Below are positions 1,828-8,720 of a stretch of DNA of 64,000 nucleotides, piece by piece. Position 1 is the first letter of the stretch; the number at the start of each line of letters is the position of its first letter. Origin of the DNA: Hyaloraphidium curvatum SAG 235-1 (Eukaryota; Fungi; Monoblepharomycota); contig JAIVFI010000004.1 of the NCBI GenBank assembly GCA_025558095.1, positions 893,335 through 957,334 on the forward strand. Direction: 5' to 3'. The position numbers and the translations under genes are program-made. A model generated the notes under the pieces. That model was not told the origin of the DNA and searched no databases. It saw only the letters and a list, made by a program, of their open reading frames with translations.

Positions 1828-2008
1828 CTTTGAAGAGTAGGTCCGTCGCGAGCGCCAGCAGGCAGCTCCAGACCGACTCTTTTGACCCCACAGACAAATC
1901 ACTGCTCACACAGTGCATTGCAAATATCTAGGTACAAATGGACGTTTCCATGACCAAGTCCTCAGCATTCCACGCGGCTCAACGGCACTCCACCATCGCG
2001 ATCTGCAT

Positions 2009-5000
2009 TTACGGGTTCGCGTTCTCCGGCTCCTCGGGCACCTCCAGGAAGTCGAGCTCCGAGAGGTAGAGCCCGCTCGTGATGGTGATGTTGTAAAAGT
2101 CGACGGCTCCCGGAGCGGTGACCCATCCGAGGGGTTGGGCTGGAGGAGGGGCAAGGTCAGCATCGGCAACATCCCGAAGCCTGCGCGCTCAAACTCACTC
2201 TGCTGCACGCGATAGTTGCCCGGGGGGATCATCGTGAAGTTGTACCACCCCGTCTGAGGGTCCGATGCCACGAAGAAGAGCTGCTGCTCGCCGAGGTAGT
2301 TGGTCCCCGTGATGGCGATGCCGACGCCGCCGATGGGGATGTCGAGCGGGTCGCCGTCCCACAACCCGTTCTCGTTCTTGTCGAACCACACGCGCCCGGT
2401 GACGCCGCCGTCTTGCAGGGGCGTGGCGGTGGCGGTCCGGCTCGAGGAGGTCCGGGTGAGGCTCGACGTGGAAGTGAAGCTCGTCGTGGAGGAGCGGGTG
2501 AACGAGGTCGTCGCCGTGCGCGTCGCGGTGGTCGTGACGGTCGAACTGGTCCAGTAGCCCGCATGGCCGAGCTCGGGGAAGTTGTTGCGCGCGATGCACG
2601 CGGCGGTGAGGTCGATGTTGGACACGACGGTGGCCGTGCTGCTGGCCGAGGCGTTGCCGTTGAGGTAGCCGAACGGCTGGGTCTGCGTGACCGTGTACGT
2701 CCCGGGCTTGAGGCCGTTGAAGTAGTACATGCCATTGACGTTGATTCTGTTGCTGCCGCAGCTGAGGTCCAGGCACAACGAGTTTGTGCAGAAGGTGTTG
2801 GAGCCGCAGGATCCAGAGCTGCAGCTGTAGCTGTTCATGGTCCGCGAGACTGCAGCCCCGTTGACGTCCGTGCCCGTGAGGGTGAACACGACGTTCGAGA
2901 TTCCGACCTCCGTAACGGGATTAAAGATGTCGTCGGTCGGGGAGATGTCGACGAACGTGCGGCCCGAGACCACGAGGTTGGTGGCCGCGCCCGACGAGAT
3001 GGCGTCCGAGTCGCAGGTCAGGCCCCACCACTGGAAGGGCACGCTGTTGGGCCCGCGCACGGCCACGGTAGTCGTCGACTGCAGCACGCTGTTCTGGGCG
3101 TTTTTGAAGCCCGACGGGTTGATCTTGGTGATGGTGTAGTCGCCCGCGTCCACGTTGGCGAAGGCGTAAGCGCCCGTGCAATCCGTCACGGCCTGCGTGG
3201 AAACCGCCACGCCGAAGAGGTTGGTGCCCGTTGCCTGGATCGTGACGGATCGGATGGGCTGCTCGCCGTTGGTGAAGGCGCCGTTGTCATCGGCATCGAA
3301 GTAGACCCTGCCCGTGATCGAGGCCCGCGCAAACGTCGTCGTGCTCGTGGTGCGCGAGGTGGTGCTCTGCGTGGTCGTCCGCGTGCGCGTGCGGGTCCAG
3401 GTGACGAGCTCGCCAAAGTTGTAGTCCAGGTCGAGCGTCCCGCCGACGACGATGATGTTGGAGATGAGCGTGCCGGGCCCCAGCGAGTCGAACGTGCCGC
3501 TGGGCTGGTACTCGCGCACGGTATAGGTCCCGGGGCGCAGTGCGAGGAAGCGGTAGGTGCCGTTGGGCCTGGTGATGGCGAGGCGGCTCACGCGCACGCC
3601 CTCGGTGGTGTTGCCCGACAGGCGGATAACGGTGCCCGAGATCGGGGTCTCGCCCTCCTGGTAGACGCCGTCCTGCGACCAATCGACATAGACGATGCCG
3701 CCGATGGCGCCCATGGGGTTCGGGTTGACGTCGGGCTGAAGGAGCGTAAGCGGGAAGTCGTTGCCTATTGCGCACAAGGAGATCGGGTCAGCGGAATCCA
3801 AGTAGGCGCAATCCAGGCAAAATGCTCACCAGACCACAGGAACTTGGAGTTGGTCACGTTCTCGAGCCGCGTCTCGTACCAGCCGCTCGCCGGCGGCACC
3901 GTGTAGCCCGCCGGCACGTCCCGCTCGACGAGGTACTGCTTGCCCGGGTCGAGCGGCGCGAACAGGTACTGCCCGAACTCGTCCGTGACGGTCGTTGCCA
4001 GGGCGGAGCCGACCTTGTTCCCGTTCCCGTCCGTCTCGAAGATGCGCACGGTGACGTTGGGCACGGGGAACTTGTCCTCGGTGTAGATGCCGTCGCCCGT
4101 CGGCGAGTCGACAAAGACGATGCCCGAGAGCGCGACGGCGACCTCGCCAAAGTCCTGGTTCAGCAGGACCTGGCTCTCGCCCAGGGTGGGGACGGCGATG
4201 ACGGTGGCTGGGCCCAGGGGCGAGTTTGCGAAGCCGGCGGGCTGCACCTCGGTGATGGTGTACCCGCTCGTGGTGCCGCGGAGGTCGCCAAAGGCGTACA
4301 GGCCGGAAGGGTCGGTGGTGGTGGTCAGGTTGACGGATTCGCCGCGCGAATTGGTGCCGGTGAGGGAGAGCGTGACGTTTGACAGGCCGAGCTCGCCGTC
4401 GTCCCAGACGCCGTTGGAGTTGCTGTCGATGTAGACGCGGCCGGCGATGAGCGCGTTGGGGCGGAGGGTCGTCGTCGTGCGGGTCTGCGACCTCGTGCGG
4501 GTGGCCGTCGCCTGTAGGGGAGGGGATGCGTCAACCGGGGCGCCACGGCAACCGGAGGGCAAAACACATACGCTGCGCGTCGTCGTCAGGGTTTCCGACA
4601 GCGTGGTGGTGGGCTCCGCAGTTTGCGTTTGCGACTGCGTTTCGGTCGGCAACTCGACGGTGGTCGTCTCCGCAGCCTGCGTTTGCGTTTCGGTCGGCAG
4701 CTCGGCGGTCTGCGTCGCCGTCCAGGCCGTCCAAGTCGTGGTCACCATGATCTCGCCAAAATCGTTGTCGAGGTCGGAATCGCCGTCCACCAGCACCTTG
4801 GAGAGGATCTGGGTCGCCGGCCCCGCGGGCGAGTCGAGGTACCCGGCCGGCTGCTCCTCGTAGATGCTGTACGTCCCCGGGCGGAGGTTCGGGAACAGGT
4901 AGGTGCCGTCGGCGCCCGTGGTGGTCGTGAGGTTGATCGCCGCGCCGAGGTCGTTGGTGCCGAGCAGGTTGATGACGACGCCGGGGATGGCGACCTCGCC

Positions 5001-7293
5001 GTCGTCCACGCCGTTCAGGTTCGCGTCAACGTACACTCGGCCGCCGATCTCGGCGCTGGGGTCCGTGGGCGTGGGGGGGACGTAGCCGTCGGGCTGCTGG
5101 CACGACTTGCCGACGATCGAGGCGTGGATCTGCACGTAGTACCCGCCGGGGCACGAGGGGAAGCTGCCGGAGGAGGAGACGACGAAGGGCGAGCCGCCGT
5201 TGCCGGCCGCGACTATGGGGTACTGGCCGGGCGCCGTGTTGCCGACGGGCTGTGCGGTGGGGCGGGTGAGCACGAATGCATGCATGCGCGCAGGGGGGGC
5301 GGGACGCACCTTGGTGCACGAGTAGAGCACGTGGCCGTCGGTGATGTTGTTGCCGGTGAAGGGCGCAAAGGTGACCTCGATGCCCGTCCCGGTCAGGCCG
5401 ATGTAGGCGGACGCCATGAGCTCGCCGCAGTTCTTGCCCCCGGCGGCCGCGCCCGTCCCGGGCCGCGCGCAGGTCGAGTTGTCGCCCCGCGCAAACGCCG
5501 AGGCGCCGACGGCGAAGAGGGAAGAGTAGTTGCCGGGCTGGATGGGACCAATGATGATGCCCCAGCGGGTGGCGTCGGACGGGCTGTAGGGCTGCCCGGG
5601 GGACCAGGCGAAGCCGGTGCCGCCCGAGCCGGCACAGGGTACCACAGGGGTCGGGGTGGGGGTGGCGTCGGGGTAGCCGCAGCCGTAGGTGGCCGAGGGT
5701 TGGGCCGAGACGAAGCACTTGCCGTAGCCCAGCTGGCATCCGGCGCCGCACCAGGCTTCACCCGAGTTGCCGCCGTCGTCTGCAAAGGGGGCGGGGTCAG
5801 CCCGTGCATGCGGCGCGCATGCGATGCAACGCACCCTGGCAGAAGCCTGCTTCGGAGCAGCAGACACCGCGCCTGCACCGCTTGCCGTTCTTGGTCCCGC
5901 AGCACCCGTCCACCGACACCTCGTAGTTCTGGCACGCCAGGTACACCGGCGTCCCCGCGCTCACGCTGGCGCGCATCCCCGTGACCGTGGTGCGGCTCCA
6001 CGTGAGCGTGGTCCTCGTCATGCGGGTGCGCGTGGTGGTGGTGGTGACCTCGGGGGCCGTGTCGGGGCAGGTGAAGGACTCCTGCACCGGGCCGGAGCCG
6101 ACGAAGCACTTTCCGTAGCCGAGCTGGCAGCCGGTGCCGCACCAGGGCTCGCCGGAGTTACCGCCGTCGTCCTGTCGCATGCAAAGTGAGCTAGGGTGCA
6201 CGGGGGATGCGGGGGTTGCATGCGTACCTGGCACACGCCCCACTGCGAGCAGCACAGGCCGGGCGGGCACCGCTTGCCGACGTTGGTGCCGCACTTGTAG
6301 TTGTCCGAGATGGGGATCCTGGTGCAGGCGTTGTACACGGGTGTGCCGCGGGATACGCGGGTGAGGGTGTGCGTGGGCTCGGTGCCATCGACCTCGGCCT
6401 CGCGGGTGGGGGCCGAGGGCGGGGCGGTGGGGCAGGTGAAGGAGGTCGAGACGGGGCGGCAGCCGACGAAGCATTTGCCGTAGCCGAGCTGGCAGCCGCC
6501 GCCACACCACGGGATGCCCGAATCGTCGCCGTCGTCCTGGCACCAACCCTGTGCACCGCAATCCGTCAGAAAGAGCCCGTTGGGCCGACAATGCGCCCGC
6601 AACCTACCCATTCCGAGCAGCAGAGCCCCTCGGGGCACTTCTTGCCCCCGCTCTGCACGCCGCAGCGGCCGTCGGTGGTCACGTCGAGCGTCGGGCAGGC
6701 CATGTAGACCGGCACGCTCTTGGACACGGTGGTGAGGGTGTAGGGCGCCGGGCCCGAGGCGGTGGGGCACACCGAGTCGGGCAGCCGCCGCCTGTTGGCG
6801 GGGATGTGGCACTTGCCGTAGCCGATCTGGGCGGGGGGGTCGGGGTCAGCCGCCGGGCGGGGGGGACGGCCGTCCGGCCGCGCGGGGGAGGGGGGCCCAC
6901 CTGGCATCCGGCGCCGCACCAGGCCTCGCCCGAATCGCCTCCATCGTCTTGGCAATAACCCCATTGAGAGCAGCACTTGTTGTCCGGGCAGCGGGCGCCC
7001 CCGTTAAACCGGCCGCAACGCCCCTCAGTCGAAACAGCCAGCGTCGCGCAGGCCGCGACCACCGGCGTGCCGGCCGACACGGTGGTGACCGGCTGCGGCG
7101 CCGCCACATCGCGGTCGGCGTAGGGGCCCTCGGCGGCGAGATCGCCGAAGTCGACGTGCCCGGCCAGTTGCCGCCGCCTGAGCGAGGGAGCGACCGTCGG
7201 CCAGCAGCCGCCCGGCGCCGCGACAGCCTCCCCGATGAGCCCGAATGCCGCAAAGGCCGCCGCGAGCGCCGCGAGCGAGATCCGCGGGCGCAT
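2009..7293 (-). CDS. Large secreted multi-exon protein: signal peptide + 4x hevein/CBM18 chitin-binding + unknown domain + 7x SdrD-B-like repeats with Thr-rich linkers
   Basis: Signal peptide MRPRISLAALAAAFAAFGLIGEAVA. Four repeats CG...C...CCSxxGxCQDDG.DSG..WCG.GCQ.GYGKC at about 5700-7050. Seven repeats of type G.V(Y/F/W).D....G....E..I..V...L.G......T...G.Y.F..L.PG.Y...E.QP.G at about 2010-5055. The last exon after the GTGAGT...CAG intron reads TQPLGWVTAPGAVDFYNITITSGLYLSELDFLEVPEEPENANP-TAA (2009). Confidence 0.85.
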
Positions 7294-8085: not shown

Positions 8086-8720
8086 TCAATCCCTCTTGGA
8101 GCACGTCTTGCCCAGCACCTTGTCGTAACAGTACGCCCGGACCTCCAACCACCACTCCATGTCCGGCACGGCAAAGGTCTCGATGCAGCTCCCGCCCTCG
8201 CCCCCGCAGTTCTTGATGAAGACCTCGAAGCACCGCACGCTCAGGTACGCCCCGCCGCCGTCGTTCGACTTGAGGACCATCGGGTCCGTGACCTCCTGCG
8301 CGCGGCATCCGCCGTCAGCCAAGCCCCGTCCCGGCGGGCGGGGGGATCCCGGCCCATCGGACCCACGTTGCTGATCGTCATCAGGCTCCCCGGCAGCCCG
8401 CAGACGCTGTCCCACACCTCCAGCGTCGCCCGGATGCCCGCCCTCTTCCCGAGCCGGTAGCCCCCCGGCATGCCCGAGGTGAGGTGCAGGAAGTACTTGT
8501 CCGCCCAGTCGATCCGCACGGCGCAGCGGACCTCGCCGCGGCCGTAGGGGCGGCAGTGCGAGGCGTGCTTGTTGGCGAATTTGAGGCGGGGATCCTCGCC
8601 GTACGTGCGGCCGGGCGGGAGCATGCCGGCGCCCTCGACCTCGTCGCCAAGGGCGCGGGGGGCGGAGAGCAGCGCGGGGAGGAGGCAGAGGAGGAGGGCG
8701 AGGGGCGGAAACCGTGGCAT
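8086..8720 (-). CDS. Small secreted Cys-rich protein of unknown function (2 exons)
   Basis: Signal peptide MPRFPPLALLLCLLPALLSAPRALG. The GT-AG intron 8296-8366 joins ...LMTISN to EVTDPMVLKS...KTCSKRD*. Confidence 0.7.

What the first reader, a model, noticed from the sequence alone, without database searches (positions are those of the whole stretch)
2009..7293. Chimeric surface protein: four fungal chitin-binding domains fused to seven bacterial-type SdrD-B repeats
Seen: a signal peptide, four intron-interrupted hevein/CBM18 repeats each with an atypical DDGGxSG insert, then seven Asp-rich repeats (e.g. GRVYVDANLNGVDDGE..., GRVWFDKNENGLWDGD...) separated by Thr-rich linkers. There is no C-terminal TM or GPI-like tail. 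Known: SdrD-B/Cna-B repeats are Ca2+-stabilised stalk modules of bacterial adhesins, while CBM18 is eukaryotic. Inference: the protein tethers to a chitin wall by its N-terminus and projects a Ca2+-stiffened rod, the reverse polarity of sortase-anchored adhesins. This suggests a horizontally acquired adhesin stalk re-anchored to a fungal wall. I do not recognise this architecture from characterised proteins.
Basis: partly seen in the sequence, partly recalled or inferred. Interest (0 to 1): 0.82.

Follow-up and report, generated by a model that had tools for sequence, protein, structure and literature searches.

The report
Chitin-binding fungal protein with SdrD-type stalk
An early-diverging fungus (Hyaloraphidium curvatum) expresses one large secreted protein that joins four chitin-binding modules and an unknown domain to seven calcium-loop "stalk" domains otherwise typical of bacterial adhesins; the gene was pieced together from gene families already living in that genome, not freshly borrowed from a bacterium.

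Summary
On the minus strand, 7293 (ATG) to 2009 (stop), there is a nine-exon gene of 1598 codons. It encodes a signal peptide, four CBM18/hevein modules with a 5-residue insert, an unnamed ~180-aa beta-sandwich ("X"), and seven SdrD_B domains joined partly by Thr-rich linkers. There is no TM or GPI tail.

Spliced RNA contigs remove all eight GT..AG introns. One contig links the last CBM18 half, X and all seven repeats. The organism is Hyaloraphidium curvatum. Its deposited model (851 aa) is truncated and lacks the CBM18, X and repeat-1 parts.

The gene is an intragenomic mosaic:
- The CBM18x4+X cassette is shared with two paralogs that carry other C-termini.
- Repeat 1 matches a tandem array on another contig.
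- Repeats 2-7 are collinear with a paralog that has a different N-terminus, and with a gene in a second eukaryote.

SdrD_B units occur on at least seven contigs (50 matches). Their nearest outside relatives are bacterial at ~30-36% identity, and a single origin of the eukaryotic units is not rejected.

Chitin anchoring and a Ca2+-stiffened stalk are plausible but untested. First readers of this scan noted SdrD-B repeats on other pieces of this genome.

The parts
2009..7293 (-). Whole gene: 9 exons, 4797 coding nt, 1598 aa. Exons: 7293-6901, 6826-6608, 6548-6228, 6171-5835, 5779-5310, 5249-4572, 4511-3830, 3764-2199, 2139-2009.
   Evidence: Spliced RNA contigs of run X1 skip all introns at GT..AG. 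Sequence reading. Exon frames and lengths sum to 1598 codons plus the stop. The 3' three introns agree with the deposited model P0001.
7216..7293 (-). Signal peptide (26 aa; basic n-region, Ala/Leu-rich core, AVA-A cleavage-like site), followed by a short stretch with RRRQ. The paralogs have KRQ at this point, so it may be a kexin-type propeptide site.
   Evidence: Read from the translation. The same N-terminus is present in paralogs L014 and L015. No signal-peptide predictor was available, so this is inferred.
6809..7020 (-). CBM18 unit 1, split by intron 6827-6900. It has 8 Cys and Ser/Trp/Tyr/Trp at the hevein sugar-contact positions.
   Evidence: Pfam PF00187 33.4 bits, above the cut-off of 27.8. 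WGA alignment E 1e-15 with a 5-residue insert.
6471..6667 (-). CBM18 unit 2, split by intron 6549-6607. Ser/Trp/Trp/Trp at the contact positions.
   Evidence: Pfam match to the N-half alone, 25.8 bits. Intron joint in RNA. Reading.
6106..6296 (-). CBM18 unit 3, split by intron 6172-6227. One aromatic residue is replaced by Val.
   Evidence: Pfam match to the N-half, 22.0 bits. Intron joint in RNA. Reading.
5715..5904 (-). CBM18 unit 4, split by intron 5780-5834. The first aromatic residue is replaced by Ala.
   Evidence: Eight-Cys pattern read from the translations. No Pfam hit to either half. 77-81% identical to unit 4 of the paralogs. The intron is supported by matching loose ends on both sides.
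5094..5681 (-). Domain X, ~176 aa, split by the in-frame intron 5250-5309. It is an unnamed Cys-containing beta-sandwich.
   Evidence: No Pfam, NCBIfam or PDB sequence match. Only 18 relatives among 1.84 billion representatives. AF2 model of the paralog's X has pLDDT 80. No convincing fold match: Foldseek found none, VIA best Z 5.3, Atlas best TM 0.53.
4749..5045 (-). SdrD_B repeat 1. Of the type found in the C2 and C7 arrays.
   Evidence: Pfam. 74.5% identical to the tandem units of G000:C2 and 55% to those of C7. Groups with them in the tree.
4572..4748 (-). Thr-rich linker (about 40% Thr). The deposited truncated model starts at a Met here. Intron 4512-4571 follows.
4140..4445 (-). SdrD_B repeat 2, with a complete 12-residue EF-hand-like loop (D-x-N-x-N-G-x-x-D-x-x-E).
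   Evidence: Pfam. Aligns to S. aureus SdrD B domain at E 3.9e-9. AF2 pLDDT 96. TM 0.79 and 2.7 A to 4jdz SdrD B1.
3750..4127 (-). SdrD_B repeat 3. Its last strand lies beyond intron 3765-3829. The Ca-loop motif is degenerate.
   Evidence: Pfam SdrD_B and SpaA. Motif table.
3406..3702 (-). SdrD_B repeat 4.
   Evidence: Pfam. Pairs with a unit of the second eukaryote, SH-aLRT 100.
3019..3315 (-). SdrD_B repeat 5, preceded by a Thr-rich linker.
   Evidence: Pfam. Pairs with units of L016 and of the C34 paralog.
2569..2967 (-). SdrD_B repeat 6, with a degenerate Ca loop and a ~35-aa Cys-rich insert.
   Evidence: Pfam. Reading.
2039..2400 (-). SdrD_B repeat 7, split by intron 2140-2198 and preceded by a 63-aa Ser/Thr-rich linker. 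The protein ends 9 aa later in an acidic tail.
   Evidence: Pfam. Intron joint in RNA. Same C-terminus in P0001.

Best explanation
SHOWN
- This is one expressed nuclear gene of the fungus Hyaloraphidium curvatum (Monoblepharomycota).
- It encodes a 1598-aa secreted modular protein: signal peptide, four CBM18 modules, a lineage-restricted beta-sandwich (X), then seven SdrD_B immunoglobulin-like domains. Most of these keep the EF-hand-like D-x-N-x-N-G loop and the D-x-x-G-x-Y-x-F motif of the staphylococcal B domains. Thr-rich linkers are interspersed, and there is no membrane, GPI or sortase signal.
- The gene is a mosaic made inside this lineage. The [SP-CBM18x4-X] cassette is shared with two paralogs. 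One repeat is of the C2/C7 array type. The six-repeat stalk is shared with a paralog on contig C34 and with a gene of a second eukaryote.

INFERRED (mechanism)
- After secretion the CBM18 block, possibly helped by X, binds chitin non-covalently, most likely in the cell's own wall.
- The O-glycosylated linkers and Ca2+-loaded SdrD_B domains then form an extended, protease-resistant fibril projecting outward.
- In this reading the N-terminal cassette is a general wall-targeting module and the C-terminal part is the variable displayed part.
- The SdrD_B family as a whole probably entered this fungal lineage from bacteria long ago and then expanded and shuffled.
For: Gene and transcript:
- All 8 introns are removed in RNA contigs. 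One 3586-nt contig spans 1961-5780. Joints or matching loose ends cover every other intron.

Domains:
- Pfam; WGA alignments with the insert.
- SdrD by sequence at E 3.9e-9 and by fold, TM 0.79 at 2.7 A.
- Ca-loop and DxxGxYxF motifs are present in 5 and 6 of the 7 repeats respectively.

Organism and truncated annotation.

Mosaic:
- X has two further genomic copies, each just downstream of CBM18 clusters.
- Exons 1-5 plus the first 66 aa of exon 6 are 60-87% identical and collinear with L014 and L015.
- Repeat 1 is 74.5% identical to the C2 units.
- Exons 7-9 are collinear with the C34 gene at 47-56% and with L016 at 46-56%.
- The paralogs end in other modules: a second X, or an unknown 300-aa domain.

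Family history:
- 50 PF17210 matches on 7 contigs.
- Apart from H. curvatum's own proteins and unnamed records, every named hit is bacterial, at ~26-37% identity over long alignments.
- The Atlas neighbours are all prokaryotic.
- Holding all 29 eukaryotic units as one clade is not rejected (p-AU 0.92) and gave a better likelihood than the free quick search.
Against: - No experiment or localisation data exist. Nothing shows binding to the cell's own wall rather than to foreign chitin.
- CBM18 units 3 and 4 have each lost one aromatic contact residue.
- The distal (C-terminal) end carries no recognisable adhesive tip, so it is unclear what the stalk would present.
- No single RNA contig spans the whole gene. 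Contig depth falls from ~1130 at the 3' part to ~110-500 at the 5' exons. Shorter transcripts from an internal start therefore cannot be excluded.
- Ca loops are degenerate in repeats 3 and 6.
- The domain tree has only 110 columns and is poorly resolved. No donor can be named, and neither vertical descent nor several transfers is excluded.
Confidence: 0.5

Rival explanations
1. Released chitin lectin or bridging protein. The protein is not held on the producer's wall. It diffuses or coats foreign chitin (exuviae, other fungi, some algae and diatoms), either shielding or cross-linking chitin or helping the plankton cell stick to chitinous particles. The SdrD_B and Thr-rich parts act as a spacer or a self-associating part.
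For: - Four tandem CBM18 units give multivalent binding to any chitin.
- There is no covalent wall-linkage signal.
- H. curvatum stands out among non-chitinophilic chytrids for carrying CBM5 genes, which hints at dealings with external chitin (PMC12115818).
Against: - No catalytic domain and no second binding module for the cell's own surface was found.
- The cassette is reused with unrelated C-termini. That fits a common targeting function better than three different bridging functions.
Confidence: 0.25
2. A bacterial adhesin stalk was transferred horizontally and fused directly to a fungal CBM18 gene, creating this chimera as the product of the transfer.
For: - The nearest non-self relatives of the repeats are bacterial (Gemmataceae, Chthoniobacteraceae and others).
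- No other fungus appears among the named hits.
Against: - The repeats have paralogs at six other loci.
- Repeats 2-7 are collinear with a paralog lacking CBM18 and with a gene in a second eukaryote.
- Three spliceosomal introns lie in the repeat region.
- GC content is uniform with the rest of the gene.
- The best long alignments to bacteria are only ~30-36% identical.
- A single clade of all eukaryotic units is not rejected.
Confidence: 0.05
3. Two genes, as in the deposited annotation. An SdrD_B-only protein starts at the Met in the first linker, and the upstream CBM18/X exons belong to a separate or untranslated transcript.
For: - The deposited model P0001 starts there.
- RNA contig depth is higher over the 3' part than over the 5' exons.
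Against: - A single spliced contig runs through that Met without a break, from 1961 to 5780. It covers repeat 1, X and half of CBM18 unit 4 in one open frame.
- The P0001 start lacks a signal peptide, although the protein is made of extracellular domains.
Confidence: 0.07
4. Bacterial contamination or an assembly chimera.
For: The domain family is mostly prokaryotic.
Against: - There are eight GT..AG introns of 55-74 nt, four with CTGAC branch-like sites, all removed in RNA.
- The gene lies inside a 957-kb contig with eukaryotic neighbours.
Confidence: 0.01

Closest known systems
Staphylococcal Sdr proteins (SdrD, SdrC; also UafA): B-repeat stalk of MSCRAMM adhesins
   Same: - Same domain family (PF17210) and same fold (TM 0.79 to SdrD B1).
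- Same EF-hand-like loop and DxxGxY motif.
- Tandem arrangement as a spacer between two functional ends.
   Different: - No A-region ligand-binding domain, no Ser-Asp repeat and no LPXTG sortase signal.
- The MSCRAMM_SdrD model scores 41.5 bits against a cut-off of 2500.
- The presumed anchor is N-terminal and non-covalent.
- The gene is eukaryotic, with introns and Thr-rich linkers.
Multi-CBM18 'lectin-like' secreted proteins of chytrids and other fungi, and plant hevein lectins (WGA)
   Same: Tandem 8-Cys hevein modules behind a signal peptide, with the Ser/aromatic sugar-contact residues conserved in units 1 and 2.
   Different: - A 5-residue acidic/Gly insert before the last aromatic contact residue.
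- A conserved extra Cys pair in each spacer.
- Fusion to X and to an SdrD_B stalk, which was not seen in any hit list or paper searched here.
Bacterial fibrillar adhesins (stalk + adhesive domain + anchor; Monzon et al., bioRxiv 10.1101/2021.12.07.471604)
   Same: Overall logic: a long stalk of repeated Ig-like domains (SdrD_B is a listed stalk domain) with a binding module at one end.
   Different: - Eukaryotic host.
- The only recognisable binding module (CBM18) would serve as the anchor, and no adhesive tip is recognisable at the far end.
Fungal GPI- or Pir-linked wall adhesins (Als, Flo, Epa)
   Same: Secreted, Ser/Thr-rich, repeat-containing surface proteins that project a domain from the wall.
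   Different: - No GPI signal and no Pir repeats.
- The stalk is made of folded Ca-loop Ig-like domains.
- Polarity is reversed.
In-genome paralogs: C38 and C39 (SP-CBM18x4-X-other) and C34 (other N-terminus + SdrD_B stalk); P0005 in Logan SRR23967301
   Same: Collinear at 47-87% identity with the corresponding halves of this gene.
   Different: None of them combines the two halves.

Membership tests
CBM18 / Chitin_bind_1 (PF00187) | Profile match above the curated cut-off | tested here: met
   Unit 1 scores 33.4 bits against 27.8. Units 2 and 3 are split by introns and match by their N-halves only (25.8 and 22.0 bits). Unit 4 gave no Pfam hit. WGA matches at E 1e-15.
CBM18 / Chitin_bind_1 (PF00187) | Eight-cysteine hevein pattern | tested here: met
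   All four units show C..C..CC..C..C..C..C across their two exons.
CBM18 / Chitin_bind_1 (PF00187) | Ser plus three aromatic sugar-contact residues | tested here: inconclusive
   Complete in units 1 and 2. One aromatic residue is replaced in unit 3 (Val) and in unit 4 (Ala). The insert lies next to the last contact residue.
CBM18 / Chitin_bind_1 (PF00187) | Binds chitin or chito-oligomers | not testable with these tools
   Needs a pull-down or ITC experiment.
SdrD_B (PF17210) | Profile match above the curated cut-off | tested here: met
   131.5 and 125.6 bits against 29.7; seven units.
SdrD_B (PF17210) | Fold of the SdrD B1 domain | tested here: met
   Repeat 2 model has pLDDT 96. The best PDB matches are SdrD B domains: 4jdz TM 0.79 at 2.7 A, 8vdk, 10ps.
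SdrD_B (PF17210) | EF-hand-like Ca2+ loop D-x-N/D-x-N/D-G ... D/E | tested here: met
   Present in repeats 1, 2, 4, 5 and 7; degenerate in 3 and 6. Aligned to the SdrD loop.
SdrD_B (PF17210) | Ca2+-dependent folding or rigidity | not testable with these tools
   Needs CD, DSF or proteolysis with and without Ca2+.
MSCRAMM / sortase-anchored Sdr adhesins | A-region (N2N3 dock-lock-latch), SD repeats, LPXTG sorting signal | tested here: not met
   NCBIfam MSCRAMM_SdrD scores 41.5 bits against a cut-off of 2500, over the B region only. The C-terminus has no LPXTG or hydrophobic tail.
Fungal GPI-anchored wall proteins | C-terminal hydrophobic GPI-attachment signal | tested here: not met
   The last 42 residues are acidic or polar and end in ...ENANP.
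Fibrillar adhesin (functional class) | Stalk of repeated domains plus an adhesive domain plus a surface anchor | tested here: inconclusive
   A stalk is present. One binding block (CBM18) must serve as either anchor or adhesive end, and no second one was recognised.
Horizontally transferred gene (recent) | Nested within a donor clade, high identity to donor genes, no native paralogs or introns | tested here: not met
   About 30-36% identity to the best bacterial proteins. Paralogs at six other loci. Three introns in the repeat region. One clade of the eukaryotic units is not rejected.

The most novel reading that the evidence does not exclude
Hyaloraphidium and its relatives may use a mode of surface display not described for fungi. 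A reusable N-terminal cassette (four CBM18 units plus domain X) docks proteins non-covalently onto wall chitin and presents interchangeable C-terminal payloads. One payload is a Ca2+-rigidified stalk built from a domain family of ancient bacterial origin that has expanded to dozens of units in this genome. This would be a eukaryotic analogue of bacterial fibrillar adhesins with reversed polarity.
Probability: 0.3. Interest if true: 0.7.

Novelty: new variant of a known kind. Interest (0 to 1): 0.55.

Why it matters
Wall and surface proteins of early-diverging fungi are almost unstudied. The known fungal display systems (GPI, Pir) come from Dikarya.

Here a full-length, expressed gene that the public annotation truncates shows two things:
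- a chitin-binding cassette reused on three proteins;
- a large in-genome family of SdrD-type Ca-loop domains, otherwise known as bacterial adhesin stalks.

If the cassette anchors proteins to the wall, it gives a simple, testable display principle and a possible protein-engineering tag for chitinous surfaces. If the domain family came from bacteria, it is a worked example of a transferred module being domesticated, gaining introns, being amplified and being shuffled.

The practical point is that gene models for such repeat-rich, GC-rich genes in this assembly need RNA-guided correction.

Tried and rejected
- Assigning domain X. Pfam, NCBIfam, a PDB sequence profile, Foldseek/PDB, VIA-align against 48,161 chains (best Z 5.3) and the ESM Atlas by shape (best TM 0.53, to a Bacillota hypothetical protein) gave nothing convincing.
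- The only sequence link outside this fungal lineage is weak: a Bacteroidota T9SS protein with three X-like copies (E 9e-7).
- Naming a bacterial donor. The tree of 134 units over 110 columns is largely unresolved. The AU test only shows that one eukaryotic clade is acceptable.
- Finding the same architecture elsewhere. There was no PF00187 among the 59 hits or the 120 best listed of 700. No CBM18-X-SdrD_B protein appeared. These searches are limited by length and by shared words, so absence is not proven.
- Papers. There was no paper with SdrD plus chytrid, and none with Hyaloraphidium plus CBM18.
- The 300-aa C-terminal domain of the C39 paralog gave no family hit.
- Frame choice by absence of stops failed in this GC-rich DNA. 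It was replaced by phases from the RNA joints.
- The spliced full-length protein was never joined or sent to any tool. Every search used single exons, or stop-free stretches, by reference. As a result no whole-protein search, fold or architecture query was done.

Full report
WHAT IS THERE

The gene lies on the minus strand. The first ATG of the frame is at 7293. It is followed by a typical signal peptide.

Pfam finds Chitin_bind_1 (CBM18) in the upstream exon pieces and SdrD_B in the two long open stretches. SdrD_B scores 131.5 bits with three units in window:3768-5867:- and 125.6 bits with four units in window:1909-3801:-.

A public run (X1) holds the stretch as contigs that lack the introns, so it is cDNA-derived. 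The joints are at:
- 6826/6901
- 6547/6607
- 6170/6227
- 5249/5310
- 4510/4571
- 3763/3829
- 2139/2199

All joints have GT..AG ends on the gene's strand. The remaining intron (5780-5834) is covered by loose ends on each side that match the other side.

One 3586-nt contig runs from 1961 to 5780. That covers the 3' UTR, all seven SdrD_B units, the unknown domain and the second half of the fourth CBM18 unit.

With the cut positions checked against the sequence, the nine exons add up to 4797 nt, or 1598 codons plus the stop at 2009-2011.

Two introns (5250-5309 and 4512-4571) are 60 nt, in frame and free of stops. They cannot be seen from ORFs alone.

As required by the operators, I never joined the exons. 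Every search used one exon, or one stop-free stretch, by reference.

THE DOMAINS

CBM18:
- Unit 1 aligns to all four domains of wheat-germ agglutinin (E 1e-15).
- All four units keep eight Cys.
- The Ser/aromatic contact set is complete in units 1 and 2. It lacks one aromatic residue each in units 3 and 4.

SdrD_B:
- The units match S. aureus SdrD B domains by sequence (E 3.9e-9).
- A model of repeat 2 (pLDDT 96) has SdrD B1 as its best structural match, TM 0.79 at 2.7 A.
- The EF-hand-like loop is present in repeats 1, 2, 4, 5 and 7. It is degenerate in repeats 3 and 6.
- The DxxGxYxF motif is present in six of the seven.
- Repeat 6 has a Cys-rich insert.

The protein ends in an acidic tail without a hydrophobic stretch or LPXTG.

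Domain X:
- Between the CBM18 block and repeat 1 lies a ~176-aa domain with no Pfam, NCBIfam or PDB relative.
- It has only 18 relatives among 1.84 billion representative proteins. These are other H. curvatum proteins, proteins of one unidentified eukaryote, and distantly a Bacteroidota T9SS protein.
- Its model is a beta-sandwich (pLDDT 80) without a convincing fold match.

ORGANISM AND ANNOTATION

The best database hit is named as a hypothetical protein of Hyaloraphidium curvatum on a 957,334-bp contig, which matches the window's contig. H. curvatum is a monoblepharomycote fungus.

That deposited protein (851 aa) starts at a Met in the first Thr-rich linker and uses the same three 3' introns. 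It therefore lacks the signal peptide, the CBM18 units, X and repeat 1.

A search focused on X found no deposited H. curvatum protein of 385-1225 aa that contains it.

HOW THE GENE AROSE

X has two more copies in the genome, each directly downstream of a CBM18 cluster. Reading those loci shows two paralogs with the same signal peptide, four CBM18 units and X, but other C-terminal parts:
- On C38: a Thr-rich linker and a second X-like domain.
- On C39: a Thr/Pro-rich linker and an unassigned ~300-aa domain.

Exon-by-exon tblastn gives:
- Exons 1-5 and the first 66 residues of exon 6 are 60-87% identical and collinear with these paralogs.
- Repeat 1 is 74.5% identical to the tandem units on C2 and 55% to the 12-unit gene on C7.
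- Exons 7-9 (repeats 2-7) are collinear at 47-56% with a gene on C34.
- The same exons are collinear at 46-56% with a gene on a Logan contig of SRR23967301. That contig has GC ~55% and eukaryotic neighbour genes.
- The C34 and SRR23967301 genes both have a different, unassigned N-terminal domain and no CBM18.

The gene is thus a three-part mosaic of families already resident in this lineage.

THE SdrD_B FAMILY

PF17210 gives 50 matches on seven contigs of this 31.9-Mb genome. Several lie in long arrays.

Outside H. curvatum and the SRR23967301 organism, the named hits are all bacterial (Planctomycetota, Verrucomicrobiota, Actinomycetota, Chloroflexota and others). They reach ~26-37% identity over long alignments. 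None lists PF00187. The Atlas neighbours are prokaryotic.

A tree of 134 units is poorly resolved. It pairs repeats 2, 4 and 5 with units of the second eukaryote (98, 100 and 90 SH-aLRT) and pairs repeat 1 with the C2/C7 units.

Holding all 29 eukaryotic units together is not rejected (p-AU 0.92) and was even more likely than the quick free tree.

PF17210 proteins are also reported as numerous in a thraustochytrid transcriptome (PMC8917795), so the family is not confined to prokaryotes.

My reading is an old origin, probably bacterial, followed by expansion, intron gain and shuffling. It is not a transfer that created this gene.

MECHANISM

Shown: the composition, the expression and the history above.

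Inferred:
- The protein is secreted.
- The CBM18 block binds chitin.
- The Thr-rich linkers are O-glycosylated.
- The SdrD_B domains bind Ca2+ and form an extended stalk.

The same cassette heads three proteins with unrelated C-termini. That is the best argument that the cassette is a targeting or anchoring module and that the C-terminal part is what gets displayed.

Against it, no adhesive tip is recognisable, and binding to foreign chitin is equally compatible with the sequence. I put wall-anchored display at about 0.5 and a released chitin-binding or bridging protein at about 0.25.

COMPARISON AND NOVELTY

It works like a fibrillar adhesin or an Sdr B-region stalk. It is not an MSCRAMM: there is no A region, no SD repeats and no LPXTG, and it scores 41.5 bits against a cut-off of 2500. 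It is also not a GPI wall protein.

It is a bona fide carrier of CBM18 and SdrD_B domains. I found the combination in no hit list and no paper. Those searches cannot prove absence, and an InterPro architecture query could not be run.

I rate it a new variant of known kinds. It is of moderate interest: an unusual and expressed architecture with a clear evolutionary story, but with function untested.

First readers of this scan noted SdrD-B repeats on other pieces of the same genome. My one search confirms that independently.

Noticed in passing
L015:3912-4841 (-) and L015:2546-3157 (+) (G000:C39:450000-459999): The C39 paralog (SP-CBM18x4-X) ends in a ~300-aa domain with no Pfam or NCBIfam hit. 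A near-copy of that domain sits in inverted orientation in the neighbouring gene, behind a long Ser/Thr-rich stretch.
   Followed up: partly
L018 (G000:C2:1103000-1112999); matches at C2:1107983-1113738: At least six tandem 781-bp units with identical PF17210 scores. Each encodes two SdrD_B domains separated by an intron-like stretch. This looks like a recently amplified or homogenised array.
   Followed up: partly
L016 and L022 (Logan SRR23967301): A second, unidentified eukaryote (GC ~55%) carries two related genes. One is a collinear counterpart of the SdrD_B stalk with another N-terminal domain. The other is a protein with two X domains, preceded by an SdrD_B-like start and a Big_6 domain. 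X and SdrD_B-type modules therefore co-occur there in another order.
   Followed up: partly
window 7045-~9190 (-): An RNA contig of 2147 nt (depth ~108) runs unbroken from about 1.9 kb upstream of the ATG into exon 1. This is either a very long 5' UTR or an overlap with the transcript of the small upstream ORF at 8086-8720. It could not be followed because only one read-laying run is allowed.
   Followed up: no
window 2009-4748 versus deposited protein P0001: The public gene model (851 aa, DFJ74DRAFT_655748) is truncated at its 5' end. It starts in a linker and has no signal peptide.
   Followed up: yes
P0069 (bacterial, 3.2-Mb contig): A Bacteroidota T9SS-sorted protein holds three copies of a domain distantly like X (shared RWG...APGQYP...HG pattern). 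It is the only non-eukaryotic sequence link found for X.
   Followed up: partly
window 6608-7020, 6228-6470, 5836-6105: Each spacer between CBM18 units keeps two extra Cys (F/Y-x-C-P... and ...TPVY-x-A-C). This suggests a small disulfide-closed connector that extends the repeat unit beyond the Pfam CBM18 model.
   Followed up: no
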